From positions 331,771,402-331,835,401 of the forward strand of contig NC_085841.1 in the NCBI RefSeq assembly GCF_035594765.1: a DNA stretch of 64,000 bases, written 5' to 3'. The position numbers and the translations under genes are program-made. Positions 1-29,820 of the stretch are shown piece by piece. Under the pieces are notes generated by a model. That model worked only from the letters and a program-made list of their open reading frames with translations, did not search any database and was not told where the DNA came from. Origin of the DNA: Anolis carolinensis. Lineage: Eukaryota. Positions within the stretch are counted from its first letter, which is position 1, and the number at the start of each line of letters is the position of its first letter.

Positions 1-150
1 TGGGCAATTCCAGACAGGAAACAATTAGGGCCAGCTAACATCTTCCAACAAATGATTCCCCCAAGGAGGAAACAGCCAGGCTTTGAAGTTGTGCAAGACT
101 ATTCAATGCTAATCAAGGTGACTAATTACAACATTCATACTTGCCTCCAT
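1..150 (+). mobile_element. Penelope-like element fragment
   Basis: Similar to the reverse complement of 25800-25945 (caatgctaatcaaggtga.taatt.caacattca.ac.tgcctcca). Confidence 0.55.
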
Positions 151-239
151 AAACCAAAACCCACTTAGGAAGACGTCACAGCAACGCGTGGCCGGGCAGA
201 GCTACTAACCTTTAAAAGACTCCTGTTCATTAAACCTAC

Positions 240-2970
240 CTCAGAAGGTTCATCCAACCCAGGAATAGTATCTTCTGGAAGAACAGGTGACTGACTGGGT
301 TCTGGTGCCTGAAATGGGCGACTGGGAGTGCTGTTGAGCAGCTGAGGAGATATAAATGTGAAAAGACGGGATATAAATGTAACAACAAAATAAGAACATT
401 AACTTTTTCAAATCTGAGTATAGAATTTAAGGTTTAAAATGATCCTATAGAAAGCCAAGAGCCAGTTAGGATCACAGAAATAAGATGCTTGGATAGGAAG
501 TTCTTACCTGTTCATTGACAGTCAAGAGAAGGTTAATGGGACTGCCACTGTCTGCCTGTTTAAGTGAAGCCAGGAGAACATCTGCTCTCCAGTCACCTTC
601 CCACACCAAACATCTGCTCAAGCAAACACAGATTCAAGTCACTATGGGGAGGAGAAAGATCTGGGGTAATTGCTTCGGAAGTTAATAATGCTACAATGAC
701 TGTATTCCTCAACTTCAAAGTCTGCACTGACAGAACTGGACACAGAACACAAAGCCAATCCAAAAACTAAGGAAAATGACATCCAGGAAAGGCTGCATGA
801 CTGGCCATGTAACAACACCAAATGATATATAACTCTGAAGATCTTTGTTTAGATTCAGTCTCTGCTATAAACTTTTGGTAATTGAACTGGACATTTAAAA
901 ATCTTTATAATACAATTGGGAAACATTTAGCATGTCAGCAGCACCATAATATTGGCAGCAAATCCCATTGCACATTTCAGGTTTACCTTGCATCAGGTCT
1001 TAGTTTGCCAATCCTTTGTGGTTTGATGTCTGGATTCACTAATACGTCCACAGTGATGCTTGTCTTCTGAGAGAAATGGTTCCAGTCACCTAAACCAAAG
1101 ATCACTAGCTGTTTTGGCAATGGAAGTGGCAACCGAGTTTGGTAACATTTCCGATGTCGTTTGCTTAGAAAGAATAAAAAGCATAGTAATCTCCACAAGG
1201 AACATCATAGAGGACACACAGCAAAGAAAAGCAAGAAGTTTGTAAATACAAGAAGCAAATGTTTTGTTGACCCTGTCCTTATTTTAAAAAGCTTTAGAGA
1301 AATATTCCAAAAAGTCCTTCTAAGTTAATTGTTTGTCACCATTTTATAAAGAACATTTGGCCCAAGAAAGAAGTGATTTGCACAATTTGAGGTATTCTTT
1401 AGCATAGGGTTTCTCTCTTTTCCCAAATCTGATTTGAAAGTTTGGTACTAGTAATCTTCCCAGGAAGAAACCTAACTGAAAGTATTTTTCTTATGTACAG
1501 GCATTCCCCAAGTTTCGAACAAGATAGATTTTGTAGTTTGCAGGTACATTTTAAAGTGTAACTCCAGCCAAATGTATATATGGTTTAGTTTTTGATAGCA
1601 TAGGGAAGGGTTAACACCCCTGTGATGTTTGCTTTGCTGTCTGTGCCCTGGTTCAGAAGATTTCACCCTGCACTTTCTGTCCCTGTAATAATTGGATTTG
1701 GAAAAAAATTATTTTGTTGTGGAAAGAAGGCTTGGTGAGAAAGCTTCAATGGAGACACCTTTTTTCCATGATAACTCCTTCGGGCGTGAATATCCCCTCC
1801 AAGGGGCTGATTTCTCTCACTTCCTGACGTCTCATCCTTGTTCTTAAATCATTTGTAAGTTGGATGTTTGTAACTCAGGGACTACCTGTACTGTATAACC
1901 TAAATGGAATAGAAACCCTGCCTTGCCCAATACATGTATTCACTTCTAAAATATCTATATCAAAAGTACATAAACACCTTCATACTATAATTGGTATTAC
2001 TATTTTGTCTTTTAGATGACTTTTGATCTTTGCATGCATACATCTGCACTAAAGTGGAATAGTCTATGGCTCTAATCTTGTCCCCATGACTGCCTCTCCC
2101 GAGAGCTAACATTGCTTAATAAGTTTACAACTGATCAATCTTGTAATAAGGATAATTAGATATTCCACTAACTATCGAGAAGGCTAAAAACCACAAAAAA
2201 TGGAATTGCAAGATACAAATATCAAATCAATTTTTAAAGAAGTGGTTAAGGTCAGTTTCCAACACACTGACTCATAAACTTGTGCAAGAAAACTGGTTAA
2301 GGTTGGTTTCTAATGCATTGACTCATAAGCTTGTGCAAGAAAAGCTATTGCAGAATCCAGGAAAAGCATTCAAAAATGTAAAATTATAGTGGGTTGTGCT
2401 GACACTGGAGGAACTGTGCTAAAGCGAGCACCTATACAACCATGTTCAACTGTGAAATAATGGAGGATGTAATATATTATGCACACACAGAGGCTGGGGG
2501 GATAGCAATTTTTTCTGCTCTTGAGTATTTAGCAACAGCTTGACATACAGCAAAAGTTTTTCATAGTATGTTCAAAAACATTACGGAGCAACTGCTATTA
2601 AGCTACAGTGAAAAGTTAAATAGCTGGTATTCCTAACTTGTGCACACACCACAAATAATGTGAGAAAACTGCAATTATGAAAAGACTCCTTAGGAATTAT
2701 CGTTCTACTCCCCTGCCTCTTTTTCTAATTGGTGCCAAGCAAACAGGGCTGCCACTCCAAAGAGGCTCACCTACTGAGTTGACGAGGAGGCTCATTCAGA
2801 GACCAGAGAACGTAGAATTGAAGTTTACTTTCCTTTGGGACAGAATCAGTCCCTTGGCACTGAGGGGTCGCACCAGCTTCCCGATGCCACAAGCCTCCAG
2901 GAGCCCAGCTCCATCTACGGTGGGGAGTTCGCAGTCCACTTGTTGTCAAGAAACTAGAAGCAGAGAGCAT
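240..2970 (-). CDS. Unidentified multi-exon protein-coding gene, 5' part (no stop seen; continues past the left edge)
   Basis: Exons 2771-2970 (ATG at 2970, acceptor ttctctcag|CCATG at 2972/2973, donor gtgag), 987-1163 (ttctttctaag| ... |gtaaac), 508-613 (gcttgagcag| ... |gtaag), 240-341 (tctcctcag| ... |gtagg). Phases 2/2/0 all match. The joined ORF is 195 aa with no stop: MLSASSFLTTSGLRTPHRRWSWAPGG...KLQFYVLWSLNEPPRQLSSKRHRKCYQTRLPLPLPKQLVIFGLGDWNHFSQKTSITVDVLVNPDIKPQRIGKLRPDARCLVWEGDWRADVLLASLKQADSGSPINLLLTVNEQLLNSTPSRPFQAPEPSQSPVLPEDTIPGLDEPSE. I do not recognise the family. Confidence 0.75.
1530..1890. mobile_element. Tc1/mariner (Tigger-like) non-autonomous DNA transposon fragment
   Basis: End ...gttggatgtttgtaactcagggactacctg|ta. 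A second copy of the family lies at ~7070-7362. Confidence 0.55.
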
Positions 2971-4158
2971 GGCTGAGAGAACAGAAGACAGGAACATCTA
3001 GTAGTATAAACAGACTTTTTAAACTATCTCAAAAATCAGTTTTCATGGTTCCAGTCCAAAGAATTGTCTTCAAAACAGAGGAGTGTTGCAGTTAAAGTCC
3101 ATTGACAATTTTACACTTCTCCCCTTAACACTCCTATATGTGATGGCTGGCCTTAGTTGTAAAAAGGGAAAGGTACTTTATATCTGCTCAGAAACACTCT
3201 TTGGAGCCTCACAAGTTCCTCATGTTTGAATCAGCTGCAGGTGTGGCCAACCTGATTGTGATTCATTTACTCCAGATGGGTGGTTCAAGCTAAAGCAAAA
3301 ACTTTCCTTGCTGGAACATGAAGGAAACCTCATCTGCTTTTAAATTTTATTTTGGTCCCCAAATTATACTTACATAACAGCAAGTGTGAAATCTGAAGCA
3401 GGCCAAAGGAATTTCAACATGTTGCTTAAAGGTGACTTATAAATTAATTTCCTAAATATGCCTGTCTACTCAGAAGTCACCATCTGAGTTCAATGGAATA
3501 TACTCTGAAGTGTGCATAGGGCAACAAACTAAATAAAGAAAAAACAACCCTGTCTTAAATGTCCTGAGAGGGAACGGTGTTACTGAATGCTAATGGAAAT
3601 GTTTGTCTTTATAGCACTTACTTTTTGAAATCTTATCTAGACTCGGCATCTATTCTTGGATGTAAAATACAGGTTTGCTTAAGAGAGAAAAAATTATGTA
3701 TGTACTTACTGGAAAGTAAGCCCATTGTTAGACTAAGTGACACATGCTGCTGAAGGGCAAACTAGTTTGGGTTTAAACCTCCACTTGTCTGTTTGAGTAT
3801 GGATATTTCATCCCTGGAGCCCTGATCATAATGAGGAGGGGGGTGCCTTCACCAGCTACAGGAGAGGAGTGACTCCATTATATTAAAAAGTGACAAGAAG
3901 TCCACTTCCAGTTTTAAAACCAGTTTCCCAGTTAAGATTCCAAAATTCAAGTGTTGTAAACAAAGCTTTCAAGAGGATGATCCCAAGTACACGTTTGTTT
4001 GTGTTTATTTAACTTTTCAGACTCATTTTCATCACTGCATTGTGTACACCAAGTAGAAATAATACCAATTAAATCCATTTTAGTTACAGGTTGTAACAAC
4101 CGCCTCCTTCATACCTGTTACTACATGAATAATTCTGATTACAAGAATCAGAACTGTG

Positions 4159-5318
4159 ATCATAGAATCATAGAATAGTAGAGTTGGAAGAGACCTCACG
4201 GGCCATCCAATCCAACCCCCTGCAAGAAGCAGGAAAATCTCATTCAAAGCACCCCCGACAGATGGCCATCCAGCCTCTGCTTAAAAGCCTCCAAAGAAGG
4301 AGCCTCCACCACAGTCCAGGGCAGAGAGTTCCACTGCCAAACAGCCCTCACAGTGAGGAAGTTCTTCCTGATGTTCAGGTGGAATCTCCTTTCCTGTAGT
4401 TTAAAGCCATTGTGCCCTAGTCTGTAGGGCAGCAGAAAATAAGCTTGCTCCCTACTCCCTATGACTTCCCTTCACGTATTTGTACATGACTATCATGTCT
4501 CCTCTCAGCCTTCTCTTCTGCAGGCTAAACATGCCTAGTTCTTTAAACCGCTTCTCATAGGGCTTGTTCTCCAGACCCTTGATCATTTTAGTTGCCCTTC
4601 CCTGGACGCTTTCCCGCTTGTCAACATCTCCCTTCAATTGTGGCGCCCAGAATTGGACACAGTATTCCAGGTGTGGTCCAGGAGGAATAACATGACTTCC
4701 CTGGATCTAGATGCTATATCCCTATTTATACAGGCCAGAATCCCGTTGGCTTTTTTAGCAGTCGCGTCACATTGTAGGCTCATGTTTAACTTGTTGTCCA
4801 GGAGGACTCCAAGATCTTTTTCACACGTACTGCTGTCGAGCCAGGCGTCCCCCATTCTGTATCTTTGCATTTCATTTTTTCTGCCAAAGTGAAGTATCTT
4901 GCATTTGTCCCTGTTGAACTTCATTTTGTTAGTTTCGGCCCATCTCTCTAATCTGTCAAGATCTTTTTGAATTCTGCTCCTGTCTTCTGGAGTGTTAGCT
5001 ATCCCTCCCAGTTTGGTGTCATCTACAAACTTGATGATCGTGCCTTCTAACCCTTTGTCTAAGTCGTTAACAAAGATGTTGAACAGAACCGGGCCCAGGA
5101 TGGAACCCTGTGGCACTCCACTCGTGAGTTCTTTCCGAGATGAAGACGACGCATTGGATTCATTCGCTTAGCCAATTACAGATCCACCTAACTGTAGTTT
5201 TGTCTAGCCCACATTTTACTAGTTTGTTTGCCAGAAGGTCGTGGGGGACTTTGTCGAAGGCCTTACTGAAATCCAGGTACGCTACATCCACAGCGTTCCC
5301 TGTATCGACCCAACTCGT
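4159..5318 (-). mobile_element. CR1 LINE, 5'-truncated and frameshifted
   Basis: RT motifs [14 protein letters not shown] and KFVDDTKL; (ATTCTATG)n 3' tail at ~4159-4176. Closely similar to the copy at 12797-14059 but with small deletions. Confidence 0.93.
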
Positions 5319-6321
5319 TGCTAGGTTGGTAAAGCAAGTTGACCCTCTTTACCATGTTTATCCAAAAATGGATATTTAGCCAAGCACGAAAGGAAATAAA
5401 CAGGGGTTTGTTTTTGTTTTCTATTAAAACAGTTCACAAGTGAGCATAAAAACATTTCGCACTTCTTGTTTGAGCTTAGTCAATAAATCTACTGTGAACT
5501 GCTTGTGTTTCATACTCCAGGACAATTACCCACACAAACAGAAATACAAAATTTCCACAAGAAAATCTGTGCTCTTGAACTTGGTACAGTTGCAGGCTGG
5601 CATACTGATTCAGGAACAACTTTTGTACACAAAGGACTTTTTAACTAAAAGCAAAGAAAAACAAAGTTTCTTAGGTGAATAGTGAAAAGATTTAATGATG
5701 TTTAAAAAATCAAACATACAGTCACAAAACAGATACTTCATACAGTGTAACAGACATTACATTCTGTTTCAACAGCATACACATTAGAAAGACTGTACCA
5801 AGCCAGTACCAAAACATATAAATACCGTTTCAGTTTAAAGAAAAAAGTATGCATGGCAGGATACAAACATATACATATCTGGTGCATAACATTTCAGATT
5901 AGGAGGAATCTTACCCCCCCCCCCCCCAAAAAAAAAAAAAAAACCTCACAAGGTGCCAAAAAAGAGCACCAAACTGGCATTCTGACTCGCAGGCAAACTG
6001 CAGTTAGAGCCTGATCATTTCAGAAGACAAATAGCATATCCATGTGTTTCTGTCAAAACGTTAGACTTCCAATACCAGTTTTCATCTTTTTGCCATCCAA
6101 TCCTATGCATCACCACATTCTACAAAACAGCCTTCCTTGGGCAGGGTTTAGCCATCAGCTTCTAGAACTTGGAAAAGTTTTTTTCTCCAGCCATTTAAGA
6201 GCAGGGATTTTAGAAGTTGTAGCCATAGACGTGATGCCTTGGGTTTCTTGTCCAATTCTATATCCATTAATGGTTAATGACACAGCAACTACAAGAGGAA
6301 ACACCTAGCTGGTGATATGAT

Positions 6322-6669
6322 AGGTAAAGGTTTCTCTTGACATTAAGTCCAGTCATGTCTGACTCTGGGGGTTGGTGCTCATCTCCATTTCTAAGCCGAA
6401 GAGCCGGCGTTGTCCATAGACACCTACAAGGTCATGTGGCCGGCATGACTGCATGGAGTGCCGTTACCTTCCTGCCGGAGCAGGATCTACTGACCTACTG
6501 AGCAGGACCTATTGATCTACTCACATTGGCATGTTTTCGAACTGCTAGGTTGGCAGAAGCTGGAGCTAACAGTGAGCACTCATTCCGCTCCCGGGGTTTG
6601 AACCTGCGACCTTTCGGTCTGCAAGTTCAGCAGCTCAGTGCTTTAACACACTTCGCCACCAGGGCTCCA
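6322..6669 (-). mobile_element. Sauria-type SINE with 10-bp target site duplication (TSD)
   Basis: tRNA-like head and (ACCTTT)n-type tail. TSD gtgatatgat at 6312-6321 and 6670-6679. Paralogous copies at 36377 and 45708. Confidence 0.88.
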
Positions 6670-7069
6670 GTGATATGATGCCAACTACCTATTTAAAACG
6701 CTGGACGTGAGCTCTGAATTATGCAGAAATTCTTTATGTCTTGAATGTCCAAAACATAAATAAAACTATGTAAGAGTATTCTAGTGATGTCCTAGGGAAA
6801 GATTAATCCATCGTTGGTTTATCAGTCAAAAATCTATGTCCATTGCATCTCTATTTCTTGAAAAGAAGTCCCCTACTCTGCATGCCAAGTAACCGTTCTG
6901 TTCAAGACCAGGAGTTCTCAAATGTCTGACTCTTAAGGAAACACAATATTCTGAAATTGCACATACTTAAACAAGAACAAACAAACAAAACTCAACCCAT
7001 ATTTACTTTGTTTCCTAGGATTTACCACAGCCAAATGATTAGTGGCAAACTAACTACAAGCAGTTCTTA

Positions 7070-7362
7070 AGTTGAATATGTTTGTAAATCAGAACAGGTA
7101 CACTTTTCAGTGTAACTCCAGTGCGCGCGCACACACACACACACACATATATATCTTTGGACAGCATAGGGAAGAGCTAACACCCCTGTGATGTGTTTTG
7201 CTGTCTGTTCGGACACCCCAGTAATATTTGTTTTATTGTCTCTGTTCCTGTTCAGAAGATTTCACCTCACTTTCTGTCCCTGTGATAATTGGATTTTGAA
7301 AAAATTGTCTTAACTATGAGTCGTTTGTAAGTTGGATGTTTGTAACCTAAGGGCTGCCTGTA
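7070..7362. mobile_element. Tc1/mariner (Tigger-like) non-autonomous element fragment
   Basis: Homologous to 1530-1890; contains a (CA)n run at ~7129-7148. Confidence 0.55.
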
Positions 7363-10300
7363 TTGCAAAACAAAAGAGCCATTTAAGGCCACAGAATGCT
7401 TTAAGATTAAAGAGAACATTTGTTCAACTGATTTCCCCCAGATAATCATGGCTATAAGACAAACAATACACAGGCTCTTCTGTTGCACAGATATCTATCT
7501 TGGTGTCGTGGTCTGAGCAGTAGAGAATGAACAACTAAAAGCAGACACGATTCACCCAAACAAGGTAGTCAGAAGTTAGGTTATATCACTGCAGTGAACT
7601 GTCTGAAACTTGTCATTCAAGAAAGGGGGAATAAGAACATGCTTTAAAGGCACAAGTCCATGGGGTTCTATAAGTCCAACAATACAATCTTCTACATGTC
7701 TACTTAGAAATAAGCCCCAGTGACCTAAATGGTACTTACTCCTAGGTGCATGTGAACAGGAATATAGACTTTGGTTTATATCATATTGTTGTTATGTGTC
7801 TTTAAATCATTTCTGATTTATGGTGAACCTATCATAGTTGTTTGTTTTTTTTGTTGCAAGATTTGTCCAAATGGGTTCCCTTAAGTTGGAGACAATATGA
7901 CTTGCTGAAAGCTACCCTATGGGTTTCCATGGCTGAGTGGGAATTCAAACTCTGGTCTCCAGAGTCATAATGCAACACTCAAAACACTATAGCCACGCTA
8001 TATCACATAGTTCTTGTTTAATCAGGTTCCTGATACCCTTAATTGTTTTAAGGAGATGATCAAAGCAGTTTTAATTTTCTCCAAGTAACATTAAGGGATC
8101 CTTAGAATAGATTGTCACCTAGATTATCATTTATCTAATAGGCTTCTTTATCATACTAAATACACAGAAACTTGACCAAATGGAATTTGATTACAGCAAT
8201 AAATAGAAGAAATAGAATAAATTAATAACATTAATTCATGAGTTTTTTTGTAAGAGGAAAAACCAAACGAGGCCAAAATTAAGTTATAAAGAACCATAAA
8301 ACATTCAGAGAACCTTTTTTGAAGAGCTACCATGGTTGGATGCTAGACATAATTCCTCCCCATCTTTAATTGCTATATATTTTTCATTCTTTCGTCATGT
8401 TACTTTTGTACATGATGAAAAGGAATAAATTAGCCAAGTTATATCAATCATGCAGAACAAAGCTCAAAGTACATCAAATATAAAGTTAGTCATAAATTTT
8501 AGAAAATGCCTATCCTATATTTTGACCAATCTGAAACTATATCTGATTTCTCTAAAATTGCATTTCTCTTTCATCTACACCAATGAATGTAAACAGGACA
8601 AAAAGTATCTGCATCAATTCAAAACTAGTATGTATATTTGTCCTAGCTGTTTCTCACAAAAGCCTCCAGAGTTTTTCAGTCTGTGATTCTATGATCTCAC
8701 AATTTATTTTGTAAGCAGTTTATGATGGGAAGGTACACCAACCTATGGCATATGATGACATAGATCGGTGCCATCCCTATGCCTGAACAAGTCTTGGTCT
8801 GGCAAGTATATGGATCAGATATTTTGGATAGTATTTGAGTAGGATATGTAATCTGATGCCACTCACAAGTTTGAAAAATTTTGGAGAGGGAAGGATGTGA
8901 CCAGGCAGAGCCCGACACAGCCCTCAGCAGCACAAAGAGAATTACACAATAAAAACAACCACTTCAAATTCTGTCCTTCATCTTAAACATGCACAATCTT
9001 AGCTCAAACATGCATATATACAACCTTTATTTTTATATTCCTTCTTCAGGCAGAACTTTAAATAAAACAACTACTCATTATCTCCAATTTCTAACAAAAC
9101 AGTGTTCAAAATGGACACATAAAAATGGGTTGTGTATAGTGTAGAAAGTAAATAGATTAAGGTCTCAAGGGAAATACTTTGAATAATAACAAATAACCTT
9201 AGTTTAAATGCACATTCAGGGAAGGCAAGTTGTTAAAAAGCTGTCTACAGGTAATTCAAAAAGGAGAAAAAAATGAGGGAAGCTTTTTGAGACCACTTTA
9301 AAGGAGCAGTTCCTACACTGCTCATTTATGAAAAAAGAAATATACGTCCTATCCTTTAAGTCAAAGATTTTTCATTTATGTTAATACTAGAATGTCTGCG
9401 ATTCCCTATCCCAAACCAATTACTGCAGTTTTTTCTCCTTTTCATGTTATTGGTCTACAACAAGTTGTGTATGAGTTCCTCAAATCATAACCTGAAGGAA
9501 AACAAATTGCACTTGAAAAACTTTTTAAAAGTTAGTAAGGATACTTCTTTACCATTTCTCATTTCCATTGCTTGAAGTGGAAAAAGTTGAAGATTCAACT
9601 CCATGAACCTTTTCTCCATTAGAATTGTGTTGATTGCAAAAAATGGTTTTTCCCCGTCCTATTTACTTTTCCAGTTACATTATTAGCTTCACTTAGCAAA
9701 GTACATAATATGGCAAAGAGAATCTGAAGCATTTTTGGAAAGTGAATTCTTTGGCTTTATATCTTCCATCACTAAACTTGTATCAGCAATGGCTTTCCCT
9801 AGAAACGTTTCCAAAAATCCATGTTAAACTATGAATGTTTGCTGCAATCATGCAAAGAACCAAGGAAACACATTAGATAAAATGTCACAGACAGCAGCTG
9901 TTTTGAAAGGCATATTCACATTTGCATCTGAAATCTTTGTATACATTTATACATCCTCTGCTGCAGAGACAACCATAAGATACATACATATATCCTCTAA
10001 GACCTGAGCTGTGAATGACAGATGATGCAATTGCCAAACTCTGATATGGGATAGGAAATTGTGCTACTTATTAAAAACTGGCAATAGCATCTGAACTCTG
10101 TGTGGGATGTGTGGAAAGAGATTCTTACTGGTTACTGATAGTCCTGAGATCTTCAATGATGGATTTTTAAAATAAGGCCTAGACTGACTGGTGGGGTCCA
10201 TACCATAATAAAACATGAACAAACTGCAGAATCCTTATCAGAACTAATAACTCAAAGCCCTTATAAGAGAAGGAAAAGGGCTAATGTGTGGGCCAATGAC

Positions 10301-11473
10301 TGCTTCACTGTCACTTTTTTCCTGTACTAACTTGTTTGTGTTTGGGATGGGTTTGAGTAGGTGCACTTAGGTCTGCGTGTAAGTTTTTTTCTGTTGGAAA
10401 TGTTATACTGCTGGGGAACTGAGGTGAAGCATAGCATACATAAGAAGCACAAAAATCATATAACCACATTCAGACTATGGATACGTAAGAAGTGATAGGC
10501 AGCAGAGAACAGACTGCTTCAATTTGACTATCAAGGTGATGCATTTTTAAAATATTTACCCAAAATATCACATTCAGTGGAAACAAAAACATGTAACTCT
10601 TGGGCTTCCATTTATTAGAGGATTTTATATCCTTCTAGTAAATTCTGGTTTGACAACTATATCTAACGCTGTGCTGAATTTATGCAAAAAGCCAATTATT
10701 AGAGAAGCACATTGTGCCTTAAAATGTGTGAAGGAACAGAAAGTAAATTTTTGTTTATGACAGATTTTCAATTATTTCCCCAAACAAGAGTTTTATGGTT
10801 TATTGTTCCTTCTCCCATAGTTGTTTTACTCCCTTTATTGACAGAAAATTCATGAGGTCTTAACTCTTGGATCAACTCTGGTTGCTGATTCAAGTCAAGC
10901 TGTGCTATCCAAACATGTATGTCAAAAATTGAATCCTGGCTGTGCCTTGCACTGAACATGCCAGTGTTCCTGGAGGCAGAAGAAAGGCACGCTTCCAGTG
11001 GTGCTGAAGGCTTATTTACATTCGATTTCATGAGATTCTCATGGACCAGGCAAATGACAACGCCTCATATCACAGTAACAGCACAGTTCTAGACACAGTT
11101 CTACAGGCTGCTTTGGCAGTTGATCCAAGTGAATTTTTGCAGCCAGAATATAAGAAGAGAATATAATGCACCCAAAAAGTAAAAGGCATATTTCAATCTG
11201 AGTTCATACAAGTGCAACAGAAAGGAAAGGCAAACACTTGAACCCCACGTCCAGTGACTTGCTTTGCTGAGGCTAAAAATCCAGCATGGTGTTTGCATAA
11301 AACAAAGTGGAGCTGCTGCCAGTGACTGCTTGCCCCACCTTCACAGTGAAGCGCAACTGAAAGAAGTCATCTGCACATAAGCACAGAAATGCATATAAGA
11401 TTTGGCTATCAAGAAGTACCTCTAGTCACAGACTTCGCTCTAGTCCTTTATGTCTCACTCATTCCAACCTTGC

Positions 11474-14400
11474 TTAGCTGGTATAATAGACATGGAAGAA
11501 AAGAATCTTGTTGCGTAGAAGAGAGTAAGAGTTATCGAATTTGAGCAAGTAGATGCCTTCGCCTGGATACTCGTGGCTGCCTATTTGCACTTCGTGATGG
11601 CTGTCCCTTCGGTAGACTGGCATGATCTCCCCATAATGGCTTCTCAAATAGCTTTTGGAGCCCCTTTCCACATCACCAACAGGGATAGGTCCTGAGAAGA
11701 AAAACACGCAACACATTTCTCATGTTAAGAAGCCAAGAGAAGAAATACAAAGGCTTGGAATCAGGGTAAGACTGACTGATCAAAACCGTCTTTACGAAGA
11801 AGGCATAAGGCCAAATGCTGGACGTGGCTCTCAAGACAGTTCCTATTAACAATGCCCTTGAATCACTACATCTCTCTAAAAGTATCTTCTTGAAATTCAA
11901 CACCTTAGTCCTTCTTATATGTCAGTAATGTGTTTTAAAAAACCCCAAACCATGCTTACAGAACAGTTAATCACACTGACACCAGTATATTTTTCAGCAT
12001 CCACAGGTTTGTATATTGCATACTATAGTCAGTGATGAAAACTTAAAGATAATGCACAGCAACTTTCTATGACTAGAGAAATAATAATTAAGGAGGTTTT
12101 CATCATTGCTAAATCCAGTGTTTTTGGACCTATGAAACTGAGTACATATAACTGAAGCTAAAATTCAAGCATTGTGTCTGCATAAAGACCCAGCATGTAG
12201 TAGTGATTTGAGCTTTTTATTAAGACTCTGAAGACTAGGGTTCGAATCCTTGCTTGAAACACACTAGATGATCTTAGGCAAATCACACTCTCTCAGCATC
12301 AGAGGAACATAAAGGCAAACCTCTCTCTTAACAAATCTTGCCAAGAACACTCTTTGGTAGGTTTGCCTTAGGACAAAGTTTCTCAAACTGTACTCCTCCA
12401 GATGTTTTGGAATTCAGCTCCTATGATTCCTAACAGCTGGTAAACTGACTGGGATTTTTGGAAGTTGAAGTCCAAAACACCTGGAGGAGCACAGTTTGAG
12501 AAACACTGCCTTGGGGTTTCCATAAATCAGAAACAACTTGAAGACACATAATAAACATACAGCTTAGTTGTTTTATTGCCAGTACAGAAAAAATAAGTGC
12601 AGGATTTGTAATCTGAATCTTAAAACAGTACACTAATTATCATTAACCTTAGACTTGGTCTAAGCAAAGGAACACAGCAAACCATTCCTGCAGTGCTCCC
12701 CAATCTATGGAATTCATTCCCTAATTAAGTGCAAATCCTTGATGGTTTGTAGAAAGAATTGCTAAGTTTTTGATTGTGAGAAGGCTTGTCAAGTTTTCAT
12801 AGAATCATAGAATAGTAGAGTTGGAAGAGACCTCATGGGCCATCCAGTCCAACCCCCCGCTAAGAAGCAGGAAATCGCATTCAAAGCACCCCCGACAGAT
12901 GGCCATCCAGCCTCTGTTTAAAAGCCTCCAAAGAAGGAGCCTCCACCACAGCCCGGGGGAGAGAGTTCCACTGTCGAACAGCTCTCACAGTGAGGAAGTT
13001 CTTCCTGATGTTCAGGTGGAATCTCCTTTCCTGTCGTTTGAAGCCATTGTTCCGTGTCCTAGTCTGCAGGGCAGCAGAAAACAAGCTTGCTCCCTCCTCC
13101 CTATGACTTCCCCTCATGTATTTGTACATGGCTATCATGTCTCCTCTCAGCCTTCTCTTCTGCAGGCTAAACATGCCCAGCTCTTTAAGCCGCTCCTCAT
13201 AGGGCTTGTTCTCCAGACCCTTAATCATTTTAGTCGCCCTCCTCTGGACGCTTTCCAGCTTGTCAACATCTCCCTTCAACTGCGGTGCCCAGAATTGGAC
13301 GCAGTATTCCAGGTGTGGTCTGACCAAGGCAGAATAGAGGGGGAGCATGACTTCCCTGGATCTAGACGCTATTCCCCTATTGATGCAGGCCAGAATCCCG
13401 TTGGCTTTTTTAGCTGCCGCATCACATTGTTGGCTCATATTTAACTTGTTGTCCACGAGGACTCCAAGATCTTTTTCGCACACACTGCTGTCAAGCCAGG
13501 CGTCCCCGATTCTGTATCTTTGATTTCCATTTTTTCTGCCGAAATGAAGTATCTTGCATTTGTCCCTGTTGAACTTCATTTTGTCAGTTTCGGCCCATCT
13601 CTCTAGTCTGTCAAGATCGTTTTGAATTCTGCTCCTGTCTTCTGGAGTATTAGCTATCCCTCCCAGTTTGGTGTCGTCTGCAAACTTGATGATCGTGCCT
13701 TCTAACCCTTCGTCTAAGTCGTTAATAAAGATGTTGAACAGAACCGGGCCCAGGACGGAGCCCTGCGGCACTCCACTTGTCACTTCTTTCCATGATGAAG
13801 ACGACGCATTGGTGAGCACCCTCTGGGTTCATTCGCTTAGCCAATTACAGATCCACCTAACCGTAGTTTTGTCTAGCCCACATTTTACTAGTTTGTTTGC
13901 CAGAAGGTCGTGGGGGACTTTGTCGAAGGCCTTACTGAAATCCAGGTACGCTACATCCACGGCATTCCCTGTATCGACCTAACTTGTAACTCTATCGAAA
14001 AAAGAGATCAGATTAGTCTGGCATGACTTGTTTTTGGTAAATCCGTGTTGACTATTAGCTGGCTACAATATGCATTCTTAATAATGCATTTTTATTCATC
14101 TTACTCTTCCATCAAGCAAAAAGTGGGTGCTAGAAACAATATCATACGAAAGCTGACTGACACAACTTGGGGATCATAACCAGACACAACGAAGACATCT
14201 GCCCTTGCGCTTTGCTACTCTGTTGCTGTGCATGCCCAGTGTGAAACACATCTCACCACATTAAAAGAGTGGATGTAGCTCTCACTGAGACATGCCACAT
14301 TATCACGGGATATCAATGCTCCACACCACTGGAGAAATTACACTATTTAGCCAGTATTGCACCACATGACATCTGCTGGGAAGTAGCAGCCTGAATTGAA

Positions 14401-17400
14401 AGGACCAACACTGAGACATCTCTGGCCCATCCCCTGTTTGGATATCAGCCAGCTTGCCAGAGTCTTAAATCAAGAAATAGTTTTCTAAGACCTACAGAGA
14501 CACTCACAGGAACACCTCAGCAAGCAAGAGTCCAAAAGTGGCAGGCTAAAACCCGGAACCTCAAGTCATGGCTGATACTAAATAAGAGACTCCCTCCTGG
14601 GTACACAGAAGATTGGGTGACTTGGAAGGTGCTGAACAGACTGCGCTCTGGCACCACAAGATGCAGCGCCAGCTTTAAGAAGTGGGGCCACAAAGTGGAG
14701 TCCACGACATGAAAGTGTAGAGAAGAGCAAACCACAGACCACCTATTACAAATCAGTCTGAGCCATGCCACACAAACAATGGAGGACCTTCTTATAGCAA
14801 CGCCAGAGGCATTCCAAGTGGTCAGCTACTGGTCAAAGGACATTTAGTATAAAACCAAGTTTTTAACTTTATTTGTGTTTTTAAATACATTACAACTATA
14901 CCCTCGGTTTGCTTCTGATATGATAAATAAATAAATAAATAAATAAATCTTACTCCTGACTTTGGTCCTGGGAATAATCTGAAAGTGTGTGGTAGATTGG
15001 GTTAAACCATCGTGCTGACTGGACTGTTGACCGAAAGGTTGGTGGTTCAAATCCAGGGAGGGGGGTGAGCTCTCATCTGTCAGCTCTAGCTCCCCATGCA
15101 GGGACATAAGAGAAGCCTCCCACAGGATGGTAAAACATCAAACATCCTGATGTCCCCTGGACAACATCCTTGCAGACCTTGCAATTCTCTCACATCAGAA
15201 GCGACTTGCAGTTTCTCAAGTCGCTCCCGACACATACAAAAAAATTCTAAAGCAGTAGTGAAAGCTTACCACAGGCCTGGGAATCATATGCAAGTCATTC
15301 TGAATTGCTGAGAGAAGAAAAAAATTCAGTTTAAAATTAGCTAGAAATTATCATATGTTTGAATGAAGTGACACTGTAGAACTAATAAAATTTTGAAGCA
15401 TGGCACTTTAACTGCCATGCTTCAATGGACTGGAATCATGGTTGCTATAGTTTTACAAGGTCTTTAGCCTTCTCTGCCAAATAGTGTTGGAACCTCATTA
15501 AACTACAAATCTCAGAAGTCCATAGCATTGTGCCATGGCAGTAAGTGGTGCCAAATTGCATTAATTCTACAGTGTAGATGCACCCATGGCCACTGAGACA
15601 ATCCAGTTGTTCTTTTTAAATCTTTTTGCTAATCTCTAATGCTAATAATTTTACTACCATGCTCATGTTTTAACTCTCTGAACCATTTCAGCCATAATGG
15701 GTTGTTGCTGTTATGTGCCTTCAAGTCAACTCTGACTTAGGGTGGTTCTGCCACAGGATTTCCTTGGCAAGATGTATTCAAGGTTTTGCAATTACCTACA
15801 TCTATGATTGAGAGAGTGTGCCTTGGCCAAGGTCATTCAACAGAATTCCATGAATGAGAGGAGATTCAAACCTTGGTTTCCTAGGTTCCTGATCTACTAC
15901 ATTATTCTGGCTCTCAGTGTGCAATGGATCAAATGGCAAAGCCTGTGCAAGGCAGAGGAAATGCAAAACAGAAGGGAAGGATGATCTGTGTGATCTCATT
16001 TGGGATTCAAAAAGTGTAGAACCATAAAGATAAATAGATATGAGGTACAGTGAAACATTGAAGCACTTCAGTACAGCAACTATTATTCCACTTATCCACT
16101 TGTGCACTGACCTTCAAACTCTTCCTCTTCATCCTCTTCATCACTTGATTCACTGACCTGGACAGTAATGGCAGTGCTAGTAACGGGGGTCCAATCAAAA
16201 TAGACCCCAAAACCAATGTCATAATCTTCTGTGGCAAATTCCCAGCAGACTTGCTTTCCATCTGGGTGAGTTGGCACCCGGACTGTTAACACCTCACCCC
16301 GTTTGACCACCATTCGAGCATTTTTTTCCTTGGCCATCTTTGCTTTGAAATCTCTTATCTTAGAGCTTGTCCAAGTGGTTGGTGGAATCAGGGGAGGTGG
16401 TCGAACTGAAAGAAACAAAGATGGCATTATGGACTTGGAACTCTTCTTTAATAGGACTAGGTAGTCTAATAATTTTGCTATATTTCAGAAAGAATTCCTG
16501 TCTATGTGCGAGAAGACTTTTTTTCCTTCTTTAGATTTCTACACCTTATTCCAACTTTACTTTGAGTTGATTGACACTGTTATTTCAATGTTAACTCAAA
16601 TTATACTATTATTTTCAAGTAACATTCAGCTAGTTCTTTAAATATTAAATTTTACTATAGTTTATTATGCCTTTTAACCTATTGATGCAGTTTCTAAGCT
16701 AACAAATACAGAATTTTCAGAAGAGTCCAGATTACCAAATATTGCTCATGTATTTTAAAAACAATTCTGCAATTAAACAGCTGTGCTAATTAACATATCA
16801 AACTATAGCTTACTATACATATAGCTACTGAAAGTAGCTTGATTGTGATTTAAGAAATTAGCACCATAAGCGTATTGAACTGATTTGCTAAGCAGAACAG
16901 ATTGCATTACATCTCCAGAGAACTATAGCTTTGAGAACCTCATCTCAGAGATTAAACATAAATAAATATGATTTCAACATTTGAGTCTCCCTGATTCCTT
17001 GTAAGTTCCATTTATGTTTCTGTCACATACTATACATGTACCACAAACTGATAATGTAGCTTGAAATGATATGAGAGGAAGAGAATATTCAGGAGGCACC
17101 AAACTGAGAATAAGAAATACATTATACCAGAATTCATATGACCTTCAGGTCTTCTATTCTACTTACTTGTAGATCAGTTTCACTTAGCATACCCTATGGC
17201 AATAGAGCACCAATATTACATATATTTATTGCTCAGAACATTGGCTTCGAGGTCAAACTAAGAGAGAAATAAAATCTTAGCCTCACCTTTTTTCTGCTCT
17301 CCCAGCAGATCTGTTGTTTCGAGCTCTGCTGAGAGGACATCTACAGCGCCAGTATATTCTGACTGTATCATGACTATATCACCTGGCCCTTCTGGAGTAG

Positions 17401-20400
17401 GGCATTTTCTCACCTGCACAACAGCCTCCTATGGAGAAACATGTTTCCTCAGTATTACTGTCTAGTAAGATTCAGCTATTTCATTATTAAGCTTTACCTT
17501 ATTTTATTATGCCCTTTTAACCTGTTGATACAGTTTCTAAGCCAACAAATGCAGCAATTCTCTGAAGATAAGGACCAAATTACCAAGTATTGAACATGTA
17601 TCTTGAAAAACTTAAAAGTTACAAGGACAAGGGTCAAGTAAGTCTTTCCTCTACAGACTTCTACTCTCCAAGACCGCTACACATCCTCTCTTTCACCCTC
17701 ACCTCTTCTTCTGACTGTTGGCAAAGAGAAGATTCACACAGATCAATGCCCATCAGGGAGAAAGTAGGAACGGGATCAGTGGTGAAGCCAGGTAGCCAAG
17801 ATAGATGCATCTTAGTACCCCATTTTTATTTTTACTATATGGTTATGGCTGTAATGTCTGGATGAAGATTTGCAACCCTAGTCCCCCCGGGGAGATAGAG
17901 CGGGTTAAAAATAAACTTTTACTATTTTATTATAATCAAGACTATCAAAATCACTTTGATCAATAGCAGGTTATATACATAGACATTTTTTATCATTGTA
18001 CAATGACAGAGTGAATTAATACCAATAGCTAGGACAATAAATTTGTTTTCAGAAAGCTTACTTTTGATTCCAATTACATATTCTAAGTAAAAGCAAATGT
18101 AAAACCAAATTACTGTAAATTTTGCTTTCACAAGTTCATCCAAGTATTGCTGCTTTCAACGCCATAAGGACAGATTAATCAACTTACAGAACAGTTGCCA
18201 GTGATATTATATATTATTTTTAAAACTGTCGAGGTTCCTTTTTTTAGATAACTTCCAAAAATCTTCAGCCAGTAAGAATGTGAGTTAGTATGTATTTTAA
18301 TTTTAATTTAACATAATTTGCTCTAGTAAATATTGCTAACCACCTGTGTAATTCACACTCCATACCACAAACTGCCCCAAATCTGTTTCCTGTACTCTGT
18401 GATTCTTAAAATATTGTCCAAAGCTTTGCCAAGATACTTTTTAATGATAGTAGCTGTCTGATTTTACAATCTTCTAATCTCTTTTATTGCAACCACTCTT
18501 CCTCTTATCATGGTCTTTAAATAAATAGAAGATTTAATTGCATCCATATTTGTTTTTGAAGTCATGGGAAACCTCTTCAAAACTTTGTCACACTATCAAA
18601 CTTTATTCTTAACTTAATATATTGGGCTATAATCCACATTTTTTATTTTTAAAAATTGCATGCAGCCAAAACGTCAACATTTGTCATGAATAGTTTGCAT
18701 GTAATAATATATGTATTTAATGAAGTTTACAAACCCTAACATATCAAAGAAACAGAAAAATCCAATAATGTAAGCAGAAGTGTACCTGTACTATAAAAGA
18801 ATATTCCAAGCAAATCTTACCGAAGCATATTGTCTTAGTGCAGCAAAGATGAATATTGCATTTGGAAACAAAGGAATACAACATTGATATGGTATGTAAG
18901 ATATTGCCCAAGGGGCAAACCCCACCTCCTTTTGTGGTTGGATTTGATCTGTTAGGATCTCCTTTCCCACTACATCTTGCTCTTCTTGATTTCCATGACC
19001 ACATTCAGAATCCTCTGCAGTATCTTCATTTAGAGATGACCCATTCTGCAACCTCTCAGAGAAAGACAGTATTTCAATTCAGTGTTTTAAGAGCACTCTA
19101 TAATGATGAGGTGAAGCAAACAACAATTTTCAATTCTCTAGTAAGTTGTGGGAAAACGGCTTGCAGGAAGATTTGGGATACTGTAGAAACAGGACAATTC
19201 TACCATCTATATGTATGATACAGCTAAGTGGATTCTGTCACATACAAGTGAAAGTACAGCTAGAATTAATCATTGTTCTGCACTGTAATCCCACAGGTAG
19301 CAGAAAATATTCCAGCTGAGCCCATCCAATCATCTCTTGGGCTGCTTTGTAAACACTGACTTTGACAAAATACCCAACAATCTAACAGAATTAATCTGTC
19401 CACCATCCCATATCACCTAAATATAGTATAGCAATTTGACAGTTTTGTTCTCATGTCTCTGTGTCTATAAATGTAACTTTCACAAGTAACATCTTATAAG
19501 AGAGAAATACAAAATCTCTATATTATTGATGTCACAGCAAAGAAATGGCATAAGAGGCTTGCGTAAGAGCTTGCTGGTCCTGCCAGCTACCTACCCTCCC
19601 AATACTGCCCACTGCATATAGAATTATAAATATCTATAAAGTTATTTTCTCCAAAGTAAGACCATTGATTCACCAAGCTCACAGTTGCCTACTCTAATTT
19701 AATAAAGTTATTTTCCAATTCCTTGCTTTACTATGAGACATGTATTCATTACTGAGCTGAAAGTCTTCTCTTTCACAGTATGACAAAGTAGTTTACAGTG
19801 TTTGATGAGTGTGGATTGACATTATATAAAAAGAAATAAACAGTTAGCTAGAGGCACAACAGTGATAGCTATCTCCTCTATTCTCACTAATCCTGAAGGA
19901 TGTAAAACTGTCCTAGGGATTTGGCTGCTTGCTGGATTTTTGGTTCTGTCACACATTTACATAGATTGGATGAGGCTGTAACAGCATCAGAGGAAATGTT
20001 CATACCCCATATTTGTCATTGCTGGGCTAGTAACCAGATAATGGCAACAGCTTTCTCAGCTGTGTCTTTTCCATATGCAGTGCTCTTTCTCTACACGTTG
20101 AATGCTATCTACATTTTAGCACCACACGAAAGCTTGAATATTTACTCAAGCTTTTAGGACTTATTAACCACAACTTCATGCTGATTTATTGATGCATTTA
20201 TACTGTGCTGTTGATTATTACTGTTCTCCATTTTTATCATGCATTGCTTTTAGTGGTAGTAATAAAAAAAAGTTAGAAATATTTATTTGCTGGTAATAAT
20301 TCAGTTGTGTCCATATAGATAACATTAGGATGCCTAAAGTGTAGCCATCACATGACTCAAGCCATACTTACTCGGAAAAGAAAAACAAGTTCTACCAGCA

Positions 20401-23400
20401 AACATGGGAATCAATGGCTGAATACACATTCAGCCTTCATGATTACCTTAAGATGGCCAAGAAAGTTTATTGTATGTTTTTCCTTCACAACTGTTTAAAC
20501 TTCCGAGCTTAAAAATGACAGGAAAGTGGGTGCGATTTTCTGCAAAGCTAGCCAGTCTTCAGCAATTCTCTGAAAGACTTATGTAGCCTGTAAGTCAGAA
20601 ATATAAGGATCCAATAACACAGAGCACTTTTCAGGCAGCAGGAGCACTTTTTTTCAGCACTGGATGAAAAAGTATTGTGCAAGCACAGTTGAAGAGAGGT
20701 GGATACAAGGGCGACTTAAACCAATATCCTGCGAATTTTAAACTGACAGAGGAAGATTACTTCCATACAATTACCAAAACTATTTGTTGGTGGAAAGAAA
20801 ACAGTTTTAAGTCACCATCAGTTTTAAGTCACCAATAGTAACAAAATGCAAAAGTGATTAATTAGGTTAACACCATGCTCTAAATCAGCAGGATTCCAGG
20901 AGCTCATATACATCAGATGGTTTTTTCAGTGATCCCGTGCTTCCTTACTACCACTATTTCACTTCACAGTTCCTTTATATCAAGACTGTTCCAAAAATAC
21001 TTTTAACAGTCTCATGTTATATCTCTATGTATTCTTACTGTCTGTGGAATCAAGTATCCAACCTTTACAGATCTAAATATGTCATCTAGCAAGATCCACA
21101 CACTAGGTTGAACTAGAAAATTCCAGGAACACTGGTACTAAAATCTCTTGCATTTTCAAAAAACAAATTAGGCTTCTGTGGAACATTTTTTTATTCAAGA
21201 GAGACTGTTATGTCTTATACATAAAATATCCCTCAGAGGTTAAAACACACGATACATCTTGAAGTATTAAACACTAAACTCTATTCACTATCAAAAGGAG
21301 TGGAAAGATGGAAATACTACCAATGCAAAAGCCAATGAGGCCAAAGAAATTAACAGCAAACAAGTCTGACAACCTTCCCTAGGAAGTAAATTAACAATGG
21401 GTTCTACTACTGAGAAAGCTTTGTTCCTAAAAGCCATTCACATAGCCTTCAATAGCCATTGGATTTAGCAAGTGTCTTTTAGTTCAATCTAAATCTTTGA
21501 GAGTTCAAAACAATTATATTTGCTTTCTCTAGAAGCAATACCTTGAGACAGTGTTAAAAAACTGCCTATGACAATGAGGAAATCAAAGACAAAGATGTGA
21601 AGAATCACAACCATTTAAACAGTGAGTAACCATGAGTTCATGCTAACCTAGAGATTCAAAGCAAAAAACTATTTGGCATCAATTGGACTGTTGCACAGCA
21701 TTCCCCGATGGGGATATAATTACAGAGGCCCTGGGGATTTATCTCCTTTATGCTACAGCTTCATATGACAGGATTATCTCAGACTGCTTTTGAAATCTAA
21801 CATTCAGTTCCCACAATAACGGAACAAAGACTCGCCCATTTACTTCTCTTTTTAAAAAGTATGGAGTACTTTAGTTTTTGATCACTGTAAGCACCTACAG
21901 GTCAGTGCCTAAACAATGCATAACCAATTAATTTGTTGTAAGTGCCACCTGCAGATGCAACATATTATATGAACTTTGCCTCCATAATACAGAATTTTAA
22001 AACCAATGTGTCAATCTGTAAGTTTGCTTTTGAATCTAAACAAATCACCATCACTGATTTTATAAGTTTACCAGAATAACAAACAAAACTCCAAAATGAA
22101 GCACATCACAGAAGTTCAATTCTCTATTTTATCTTGATAGGTGAAAGCTGCTTTCCAAATCCCTCCATCATATGAGAAATGAAGCGTATCTTCCCTTTCT
22201 TTTTCCTTAAACACCATGTAACACAGATCTCTATCACAAATACTATACATATTTCTTACCTGCATAGCGAGGCATCATTTCCTAGACTGGCTTCTGTCTG
22301 GAATGTAGGTTCTGGCCGCTGAGTTATATCTTCATTCTCTATATTAAAAAAAGAAAACAGAAATCATCATTGGCTTTACAGTAGTACCTAACTTCCAATA
22401 TTTAAAACAAAATGTCTTTCAGTCTGGTTGTTTTTTCATGTCATACCCTGTCTTAGTAGAATTCAGGAAAAAGTATGAAAAAACCAATATATTGTGAGCA
22501 CACAAATCAAGAAGGCTTCTGTTTCAAAACAGTAAGCCTGCTTTTCAGAAAGAAACCCTAGTCATGACTAAAGCATGGCATTTGAAACTAGAGTAACAAT
22601 ATCCTGGAGAAGTGGTTGGAAGAAAACGCCAACAGTACCCCATAGATAAGGTAGCAAATAGGTTATTGTGGTAGAATCAACCCACCACATAATTTGTGTT
22701 TATAAGATAAGCCTTGGGCTCTGTTAGCAGCATATCTTAAAGCAGACAACTTACTTCCTTAAAAACTGTTTACATTGCAGGCAGAACATTGTAACCTGGG
22801 CTGACAATATGCAAATTCCACAGACTTACAAAATCCAGGACTGTGTATGTGTGCATGCCTGTAAGTTGACTGTTGAATTATAGCAACCCCATATTTTCAT
22901 AGGGTTTTCTTAGACAAGGAATACTCGGAGATGGTTTTTGCAGTGCCTTCCTCTGAAATACAGCCTACAGCACCAGGTATTCATTAGAAGTCTCCCATTC
23001 AAATACTAATTGAAGCTGACCCTTCGTTGCTTCCAAAATCAGATGGGATCTAGTATCTTTAAAATGTGTTCAGACTGCTTAAAGACATGCCTACTTATTA
23101 ATGATGGCAACCTTTCAAACACAGAAAAACTACAGACAGGCTGTAGTTCTAAGTATGTCCTCTCAAATGGAATAGAATTATGAGACTGATATGAAAAAAT
23201 ATTGAAAAATAATGTTGATGACAATGTCTTAGTCTGGGCAATTGTATCTCACCTCTAAAAGATGATATATGAAAGAGCCTTTTGTCTGTGAACACAGTTC
23301 CCCTGTTCCTCCTTTAATGTAAGCCATAGCTAACCTAGAAATTCTTTACTTCACCATAGTTTCCCACAATGTCAGACCCAGGAAACTGTTATGAATTATG

Positions 23401-26687: not shown

Positions 26688-29820
<3,133 letters not shown>

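What the first reader, a model, noticed from the sequence alone, without database searches (positions are those of the whole stretch)
240..2972. Unrecognised spliced gene directly downstream of TMED8, not expected from the human gene order
Seen in sequence: four minus-strand exons (2771-2970, 987-1163, 508-613, 240-341) with canonical splice sites. All three junction phases match and give a stop-free 195-aa ORF, which the ORF track shows only in pieces. The central ~115 aa (KLQFYVLWSLNEPPRQL...LPLPKQLVIFGLGDW...ITVDVLV...RIGKL...CLVWEGDW...INLLLTVN) has alternating hydrophobic strands and several Trp, like a compact beta-rich globular domain, and is followed by a Pro/Ser-rich linker. Established knowledge: in human the neighbour on this side of TMED8 is GSTZ1 on the opposite strand, and this protein is not GSTZ1. 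Inference: an uncharacterised gene, either lost in mammals or lineage-specific, with an unannotated N-terminal domain. This is the best candidate for an undescribed system here.
Basis: partly seen in the sequence, partly recalled or inferred. Interest (0 to 1): 0.85.

Follow-up and report, generated by a model that had tools for sequence, protein, structure and literature searches.

The report
Hikeshi-fold kelch protein missing in mammals
This is a real, spliced but unstudied lizard gene, old in animals and apparently lost in mammals, whose protein joins a domain shaped like the Hsp70 nuclear-import carrier Hikeshi to a kelch binding propeller; we found no earlier description of that pairing.

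Summary
The four exons are real. They are the 5' third of Anolis carolinensis LOC100555045 (RefSeq-predicted, uncharacterised, 616 aa), the orthologue of fish zgc:163014. One RNA contig joins all three introns exactly and runs on past the window. Exon 1 has no acceptor at 2972; it extends to at least 3127. The gene lies between TMED8 and GSTZ1 in lizard, chicken and sea bass. Relatives occur from rays to birds, in marine invertebrate contigs and in the ichthyosporean Chromosphaera. No mammalian hit appeared, so it is old and probably lost in mammals, not lineage-specific. The protein is a 115-aa domain, a disordered linker with conserved CDK/Polo-box and cyclin-docking-like motifs, and a six-bladed kelch propeller (outside the window). 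The 115-aa domain has no Pfam match, but its model (pLDDT 92) matches only the N-terminal FG-binding jelly-roll of Hikeshi (Foldseek E 2e-4; Z 9.7-11.1, next 5.7). It lacks Hikeshi's dimerisation domain and any BC-box, BTB or F-box, so it is neither Hikeshi nor a standard cullin receptor. Best reading: a phospho-regulated, tissue-restricted two-headed adaptor. Function is inferred, not shown.

The parts
2971..3127 (-). 5' UTR part of exon 1 (minimum extent). Holds two short uORFs (ATG 3102, 10 aa; ATG 3046, 5 aa) and an in-frame ATG at 2997 that RefSeq uses but Sceloporus does not share
   Evidence: RNA contig piece 2771-3127; ATG list; alignment with Sceloporus
2836..2970 (-). Exon 1 coding, 5' part: likely start ATG 2970 and a disordered N-terminal extension seen only in sauropsids (turtles and most squamates keep an RRWSW-A motif)
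   Evidence: start shared with other lizards, snakes and turtles; pLDDT < 50
2771..2835 (-). Exon 1 coding, 3' part: first strands of the Hikeshi-like domain; fish and amphibian orthologues start here
987..1163 (-). Exon 2: core strands of the Hikeshi-like jelly-roll (invariant P-x-P, G-x-W and G)
508..613 (-). Exon 3: W-x-G-x-W strand, helix and last strand of the Hikeshi-like domain
240..341 (-). Exon 4: start of the disordered linker, with the conserved S-T-P (CDK / Polo-box-like) motif
1..239 (-). Start of intron 4. The remaining exons (rest of the linker with the RxL-F motif, and the whole kelch propeller) lie about 2.6-10 kb left of position 1
   Evidence: window 1-12997 is identical to L007; exon map
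3128..3423 (-). Putative CpG-poor promoter, conserved with Sceloporus (72% identity over the aligned stretch 2701-3423)

Best explanation
The exons encode the N-terminal third of an old, single-copy holozoan protein (zgc:163014 family) that works as a regulated two-headed adaptor. Shown: gene structure, splicing, orthology and the three-part layout. Strongly supported by modelling: the N-terminal domain is a divergent Hikeshi-type jelly-roll, and the C-terminus is a six-bladed KLHDC-type kelch propeller. Inferred: the propeller binds a peptide motif of a client; the Hikeshi-like domain binds a hydrophobic (Phe/FG-type) motif of a partner or of the nuclear pore; the flexible linker carries basic NLS-like clusters and CDK/Plk1/cyclin-docking-like motifs, so the bridge is probably nuclear and switched by cell-cycle kinases. 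Expression looks tissue-restricted. A gonadal or early-embryo role is a guess.
For: Junction-exact RNA contig. dN/dS 0.27 against Sceloporus over the domain exons, with splice sites kept. Order TMED8 - gene - GSTZ1 in Anolis, chicken and sea bass, and gene - GSTZ1 in sawfish. Domain model pLDDT 92. Hikeshi is the only Foldseek hit below E 0.001; Z 9.7 against next 5.7 in the wide search; Z 11.1, rmsd 3.0, 98 aligned, covering Hikeshi residues -1 to 120; Atlas TM 0.69 to a PF05603 cluster. Propeller matches KLHDC2 at E 4e-24. The linker is disordered and pTM is 0.57, so no fixed packing between domains. S-T-P at the linker start in 86 of 111 non-redundant linkers (1.6 expected); [RK]xL(x)F in 80 of 111 (5.8 expected); basic clusters in 90 of 111 (25 expected). 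The RxL-F motif sits at the linker end in all 38 tetrapods checked but at the linker start in 7 of 12 teleosts.
Against: Sequence identity to Hikeshi is only 12-14%, no Pfam PF05603 match was found for any of 47 members, and feature search pointed weakly to C2 domains instead. No residue-level view of the pocket was available. Motif counts come from related sequences and are not independent; RxL-F is absent in lungfish, coelacanth, gar and rays. No binding, localisation or phenotype data exist. The tissue of run X11 is coded and unknown. The Anolis 3' UTR has no CPE, so there is no support for a maternal mRNA.
Confidence: 0.5

Rival explanations
1. It is a second Hikeshi-type, importin-independent nuclear carrier or Hsp70 co-factor: the N-terminal domain crosses the pore by binding FG repeats, and the kelch propeller replaces Hikeshi's C-terminal domain as the cargo-binding part.
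For: The fold match covers exactly Hikeshi's FG-binding N-terminal domain (role of that domain from PMC10636164).
Against: Hikeshi needs its C-terminal dimerisation domain to recognise Hsp70, and this is absent. A helix flanked by nearly invariant Trp residues sits where Hikeshi's extended loop is expected and may fill the pocket (inference). Classical NLS-like clusters suggest ordinary importin use.
Confidence: 0.18
2. It is a KLHDC-like substrate receptor of a ubiquitin ligase: the propeller reads a degron, and the jelly-roll domain recruits a ligase in place of a BC-box.
For: The closest solved propellers are KLHDC3 by sequence (E 3e-31) and KLHDC2 by fold.
Against: No conserved BC-box; the chain ends 21-46 residues after the last blade's FGGS. 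No BTB, F-box or SOCS-box by Pfam. Identity to KLHDC2 is only 23-24%, close to other kelch proteins (16-23%).
Confidence: 0.17
3. The jelly-roll is only an oligomerisation or structural module (nucleoplasmin-like) that resembles Hikeshi by convergence, and the protein is a kelch scaffold for a kinase or phosphatase.
For: The next fold neighbours include nucleoplasmin-like domains at Z about 5; identity to Hikeshi is low; kelch propellers of this type occur in phosphatase complexes (BSU1, FBXO42-PP2A).
Against: Hikeshi scores about twice as high, and it aligns from the first strand of the model, whereas the next-ranked jelly-rolls align only from residue 11-14.
Confidence: 0.14
4. The ORF is a chance or decaying sequence, or just extra 3' exons of TMED8.
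For: Two automatic gene models fuse TMED8 to these exons (P0163, P0314), and one gull RefSeq kelch-only product is named TMED8 (P0299).
Against: It has its own first exon and conserved upstream region, a near full-length independent contig of 2625 nt, purifying selection, and more than 200 full-length orthologues.
Confidence: 0.01

Closest known systems
zgc:163014 / LOC100555045 (Anolis) / LOC772017 (chicken) orthogroup
   Same: The same gene: 100% identity per exon to the Anolis RefSeq model, same layout and synteny.
   Different: Databases leave it uncharacterised or give borrowed kelch names (RABEPK-like, Tea1-like, ACBD4/5-like, TYW23); the N-terminal domain is unannotated, and no paper in the held library names it.
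Hikeshi (C11orf73 / Opi10; Pfam PF05603 + PF21057; PDB 3WVZ, 3WW0)
   Same: N-terminal jelly-roll of the same fold and extent (TM 0.64-0.66, Z up to 11.1).
   Different: 12-14% identity; a helix where the extended autoinhibitory loop is expected; no C-terminal dimerisation domain; fused through about 120 disordered residues to a kelch propeller.
KLHDC2 / KLHDC3 / KLHDC10 (CRL2 C-degron receptors)
   Same: Six-bladed kelch propeller of the same Pfam class (PF24681); best structural and sequence hits.
   Different: No BC-box or Cul2-box tail; an extra N-terminal domain and linker; about 20-24% identity.
RABEPK (p40), LZTR1, FBXO42
   Same: Related propeller type; RABEPK is a source of borrowed names.
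   Different: No BTB or F-box here; RABEPK is propeller-only and lies at another locus (own knowledge, not tested).

Membership tests
zgc:163014 orthogroup | N-terminal 115-aa domain + linker + kelch propeller, between TMED8 and GSTZ1 | tested here: met
Hikeshi | N-terminal jelly-roll domain fold | tested here: met
   Foldseek E 2e-4, probability 1.0; Z 9.7-11.1 against next 5.7; Atlas TM 0.69
Hikeshi | Sequence match to Pfam PF05603 (Hikeshi-like_N) | tested here: not met
   0 of 47 alignment members match at E up to 10; the A1 profile finds no PDB sequence
Hikeshi | C-terminal dimerisation domain (PF21057) needed for Hsp70 recognition | tested here: not met
   the domain is followed by a disordered linker and the kelch propeller; requirement
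Hikeshi | Extended loop with a Phe-Gly motif that docks in its own pocket | tested here: inconclusive
   the model has a helix (residues 90-102) and no FG between the last two strands; no residue-level superposition was returned
Hikeshi | Binds FG nucleoporins and imports Hsp70 | not testable with these tools
   needs experiment
KLHDC CRL2 substrate receptors | Six-bladed kelch propeller | tested here: met
KLHDC CRL2 substrate receptors | BC-box / Cul2-box after the propeller | tested here: not met
   the chain ends right after the last blade; BC-box pattern in 4 of 111 linkers against 10 expected
KLHDC CRL2 substrate receptors | C-degron-binding pocket residues on the top face | not tested
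KLHL/KBTBD and F-box-kelch receptors | BTB/BACK or F-box domain | tested here: not met
   Pfam scans show kelch families only

The most novel reading that the evidence does not exclude
A reuse of the Hikeshi domain outside Hikeshi itself: a cell-cycle-gated, importin-independent carrier or Hsp70-linked adaptor with a built-in kelch cargo receptor, present since unicellular relatives of animals, kept in the non-mammalian jawed vertebrates sampled and deleted in mammals.
Probability: 0.2. Interest if true: 0.82.

Novelty: new variant of a known kind. Interest (0 to 1): 0.58.

Why it matters
Hikeshi is treated as a stand-alone, structurally unique import carrier, and how its pocket is regulated is unresolved (PMC10636164). 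A second, divergent Hikeshi-type domain in a multidomain protein gives a natural comparison for what that fold does without the Hsp70-binding dimer. It also gives the first structural handle on a gene that is mis-named across hundreds of vertebrate annotations, and it is a clean, syntenically anchored candidate for a gene lost in mammals that can be knocked out in zebrafish or Xenopus.

Tried and rejected
Pfam on each exon and on 47 domain sequences: nothing real; the Herpes_TK_C hit at E 0.04-0.12 is chance. PDB sequence search with the domain profile: no hit. ESM Atlas feature search: nothing for exon 2; C2 and DUF1005 at 0.90 or less for the domain, rejected because fold searches do not rank C2. 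Viral fold library: nothing below E 0.001; best was baculovirus HRF-1 at E 0.027. P0021, a bacterial repeat protein, is a chance match (3.6 bits on the family profile). A search from the Chromosphaera domain found only itself. A metagenome scan with the coral exon confirmed nothing; the alignment was too diverse for pattern scans. The profile comparison with Chromosphaera is circular, because that sequence is in the alignment; I rely instead. Oocyte-gene signals: the E-box and TATA-like matches are only partly conserved and the Anolis 3' UTR has no CPE. TMED8 read-through was rejected as the main form. Papers: none for the gene's identifiers; Hikeshi plus kelch gave three unrelated papers; gene-loss papers had no supplement held or no match. 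The Hikeshi structure paper is not held. As the operators required, the joined 195-aa model was never sent to a search tool.

Full report
Observation. The four minus-strand exons exist as described. Introns are GT-AG, phases are 2, 2, 0, and the frame from ATG 2970 is open for 195 codons, while the other frames hold 9 and 14 stops. The window has no N. Run X11 contains one 2625-nt contig at depth 173 that lies without mismatch on 239-341, 508-613, 987-1163 and 2771-3127 and skips the three introns exactly. So exon 1 is a first exon that extends to at least 3127, and the acceptor-like sequence before the ATG is not used in this contig. The contig continues for 1882 nt beyond exon 4, and its loose end encodes residues 205-214 of the database protein. 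Its length fits a full coding sequence plus a 3' UTR ending near the poly(A) signal 616 nt after the stop. The other three runs laid showed only scattered, mostly intronic pieces, and five further RNA-type runs of the species held almost none of the words. This suggests restricted expression, but run identities are coded and the tissue is unknown.

Identity. Exon 2, searched alone by reference, found 34 representatives; the full-length ones are 470-620 aa and end in kelch repeats. Each exon is 100% identical to Anolis carolinensis XP_003214418.2, LOC100555045, 616 aa, and window 1-12997 is identical to the Anolis locus L007. RefSeq starts at ATG 2997; the start shared with other squamates and turtles is ATG 2970. 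Orthologues are named zgc:163014 in fish and carry borrowed kelch names elsewhere. In line with the operators' notes, searches from the window were made exon by exon by reference and the joined model was left out of all searches; it was translated once in a script only to check the frame. Whole-protein work used database proteins returned by the tools.

Distribution and synteny. Orthologues occur in rays, gar, sturgeons, teleosts, coelacanth, lungfish, amphibians, turtles, squamates and birds. The order TMED8 - gene - GSTZ1 (opposite strand) holds in Anolis, chicken and sea bass, and gene - GSTZ1 in sawfish. Intron-containing eukaryotic contigs from Tara metagenomes (probably coral; my inference from the sample series) and from another metagenome carry the same domain followed by kelch exons. 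The ichthyosporean Chromosphaera has the complete layout (E 7e-4 from exon 2 alone; 41 bits on a vertebrate-only profile). No named mammalian sequence appeared among the 120 listed domain hits or the 120 best full-length hits. These lists are incomplete (453 hits, only 120 shown), so loss in placentals is likely (about 85%) but not proven, and monotremes and marsupials are untested. That GSTZ1 abuts TMED8 in human is own knowledge. The domain exons are under purifying selection against Sceloporus (dS 0.27, dN 0.073), and splice sites are kept in Sceloporus and chicken.

Anatomy. AlphaFold2 of the full-length protein gives a disordered N-terminus (1-54), a folded domain (about 56-170), a disordered linker (172-286) and a six-bladed propeller (about 290-610); pTM 0.57 points to no fixed contact between the two domains. 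The first domain alone models at pLDDT 92 as a beta-sandwich with one helix. It has no Pfam or PDB sequence match. By fold, the only Foldseek hits below E 0.001 among 350,542 chains are the four Hikeshi chains (E 2e-4 to 9e-4, TM 0.64-0.66; next E 0.039). An independent aligner ranks Hikeshi first of 48,161 chains at Z 9.7, next 5.7, and gives Z 11.1, rmsd 3.0 over 98 residues for the F97A structure, covering Hikeshi residues -1 to 120. The Atlas returns the family's own clusters and a Hikeshi-like_N cluster at TM 0.69. Hikeshi aligns from the model's first strand, while the next-ranked jelly-rolls align only from residue 11-14. This favours common descent, although identity is 12-14%. The propeller is closest to KLHDC2/3, but the chain ends just after the last blade, and no BC-box, BTB or F-box is conserved.

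Linker. The linker is poorly conserved overall (mean column conservation 0.37, against 0.64 and 0.71 for the two domains), yet it keeps short motifs. S-T-P occurs within the first 25 residues in 86 of 111 non-redundant linkers (1.6 expected from shuffles), [RK]xL(x)F in 80 (5.8 expected) and basic clusters in 90 (25 expected). The first resembles a CDK site and Polo-box docking motif and is encoded by exon 4 of this window; the second resembles a cyclin-docking motif (consensus from own knowledge). The latter lies at the linker end in all 38 tetrapods checked, at the linker start in 7 of 12 teleosts, and is missing in lungfish, coelacanth, gar and rays. The invertebrate linker exons also hold S/T-P sites next to basic runs. 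These counts are not independent, and no motif has been shown to work.

Mechanism. Hikeshi has an FG-binding N-terminal domain, autoinhibited by its own loop, and a C-terminal dimerisation domain; the asymmetric dimer recognises Hsp70-ATP (PMC10636164; PMC12250047). This protein keeps only the first part. The most likely working model (0.5) is a two-headed adaptor: the propeller holds a client, the Hikeshi-like domain binds a hydrophobic motif of a partner or of the pore, and cell-cycle kinases acting on the linker switch or localise the bridge. A true Hikeshi-like carrier (0.18), a non-standard ubiquitin-ligase receptor (0.17) and a convergent scaffold module (0.14) remain open. Gene, splicing, orthology and layout are shown; the folds are predicted with high confidence; every functional step is inference.

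Novelty. The gene is already predicted in RefSeq, so it is not a new gene. No paper in the held library names it, links Hikeshi to a kelch protein, or reports the fold in another protein; subscription papers and newer domain databases could not be checked. It fails the membership tests for Hikeshi (no dimerisation domain, no Pfam match) and for KLHDC-type CRL2 receptors (no BC-box), so I file it as a new domain combination of known parts. The scan's earlier notes held nothing on this locus. Interest 0.58.

Noticed in passing
window 2836-2970 (-): Sauropsids have replaced the ancestral start with an N-terminal extension. Turtles and most squamates keep an S/T-P-x-R-R-W-S-W-A motif; birds have a shorter Arg-rich one. 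In Anolis the first 30 residues hold no acidic residue, so a targeting peptide or kinase site is possible.
   Followed up: partly
window 2795 and 1090/1089 (-): RefSeq isoform X2 (P0174) uses an internal ATG in another frame and an acceptor inside exon 2, which removes the first strands of the Hikeshi-like domain. It was not seen in the X11 contig.
   Followed up: partly
window 4160-5370 and 12800-14000: Reverse-transcriptase-bearing LINE fragments (CR1-like, by own knowledge); the first lies between TMED8 and this gene's promoter and is a high-copy repeat in the read sets.
   Followed up: no
P0163, P0314, P0299: Gene models in a gadiform fish and in Podarcis lilfordi fuse TMED8 to exon 2 of this gene, and a gull kelch-only product is named TMED8. 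These are probably annotation merges, though occasional read-through is not excluded.
   Followed up: partly
window 11474-26468 (-), 26688-29820 (+), 36959-37558 (-): Neighbours: TMED8 exons; an acidic-start ORF consistent with SAMD15, and an ORF with a GxGxxG motif consistent with NOXRED1 (names from own knowledge and sea bass synteny).
   Followed up: partly
P0033 linker; L006 5700-6100: PCNA-interacting-box-like strings occur in the Chromosphaera linker and, more loosely, in an invertebrate linker, but in none of the vertebrate linkers checked.
   Followed up: partly
L001 7913-8146: The probable coral gene lacks the intron that separates exons 2 and 3 in vertebrates, whereas L005/L006 have it.
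   Followed up: no
window 46352-47965 (-): Broken ORFs of another non-LTR retrotransposon reverse transcriptase.
   Followed up: no
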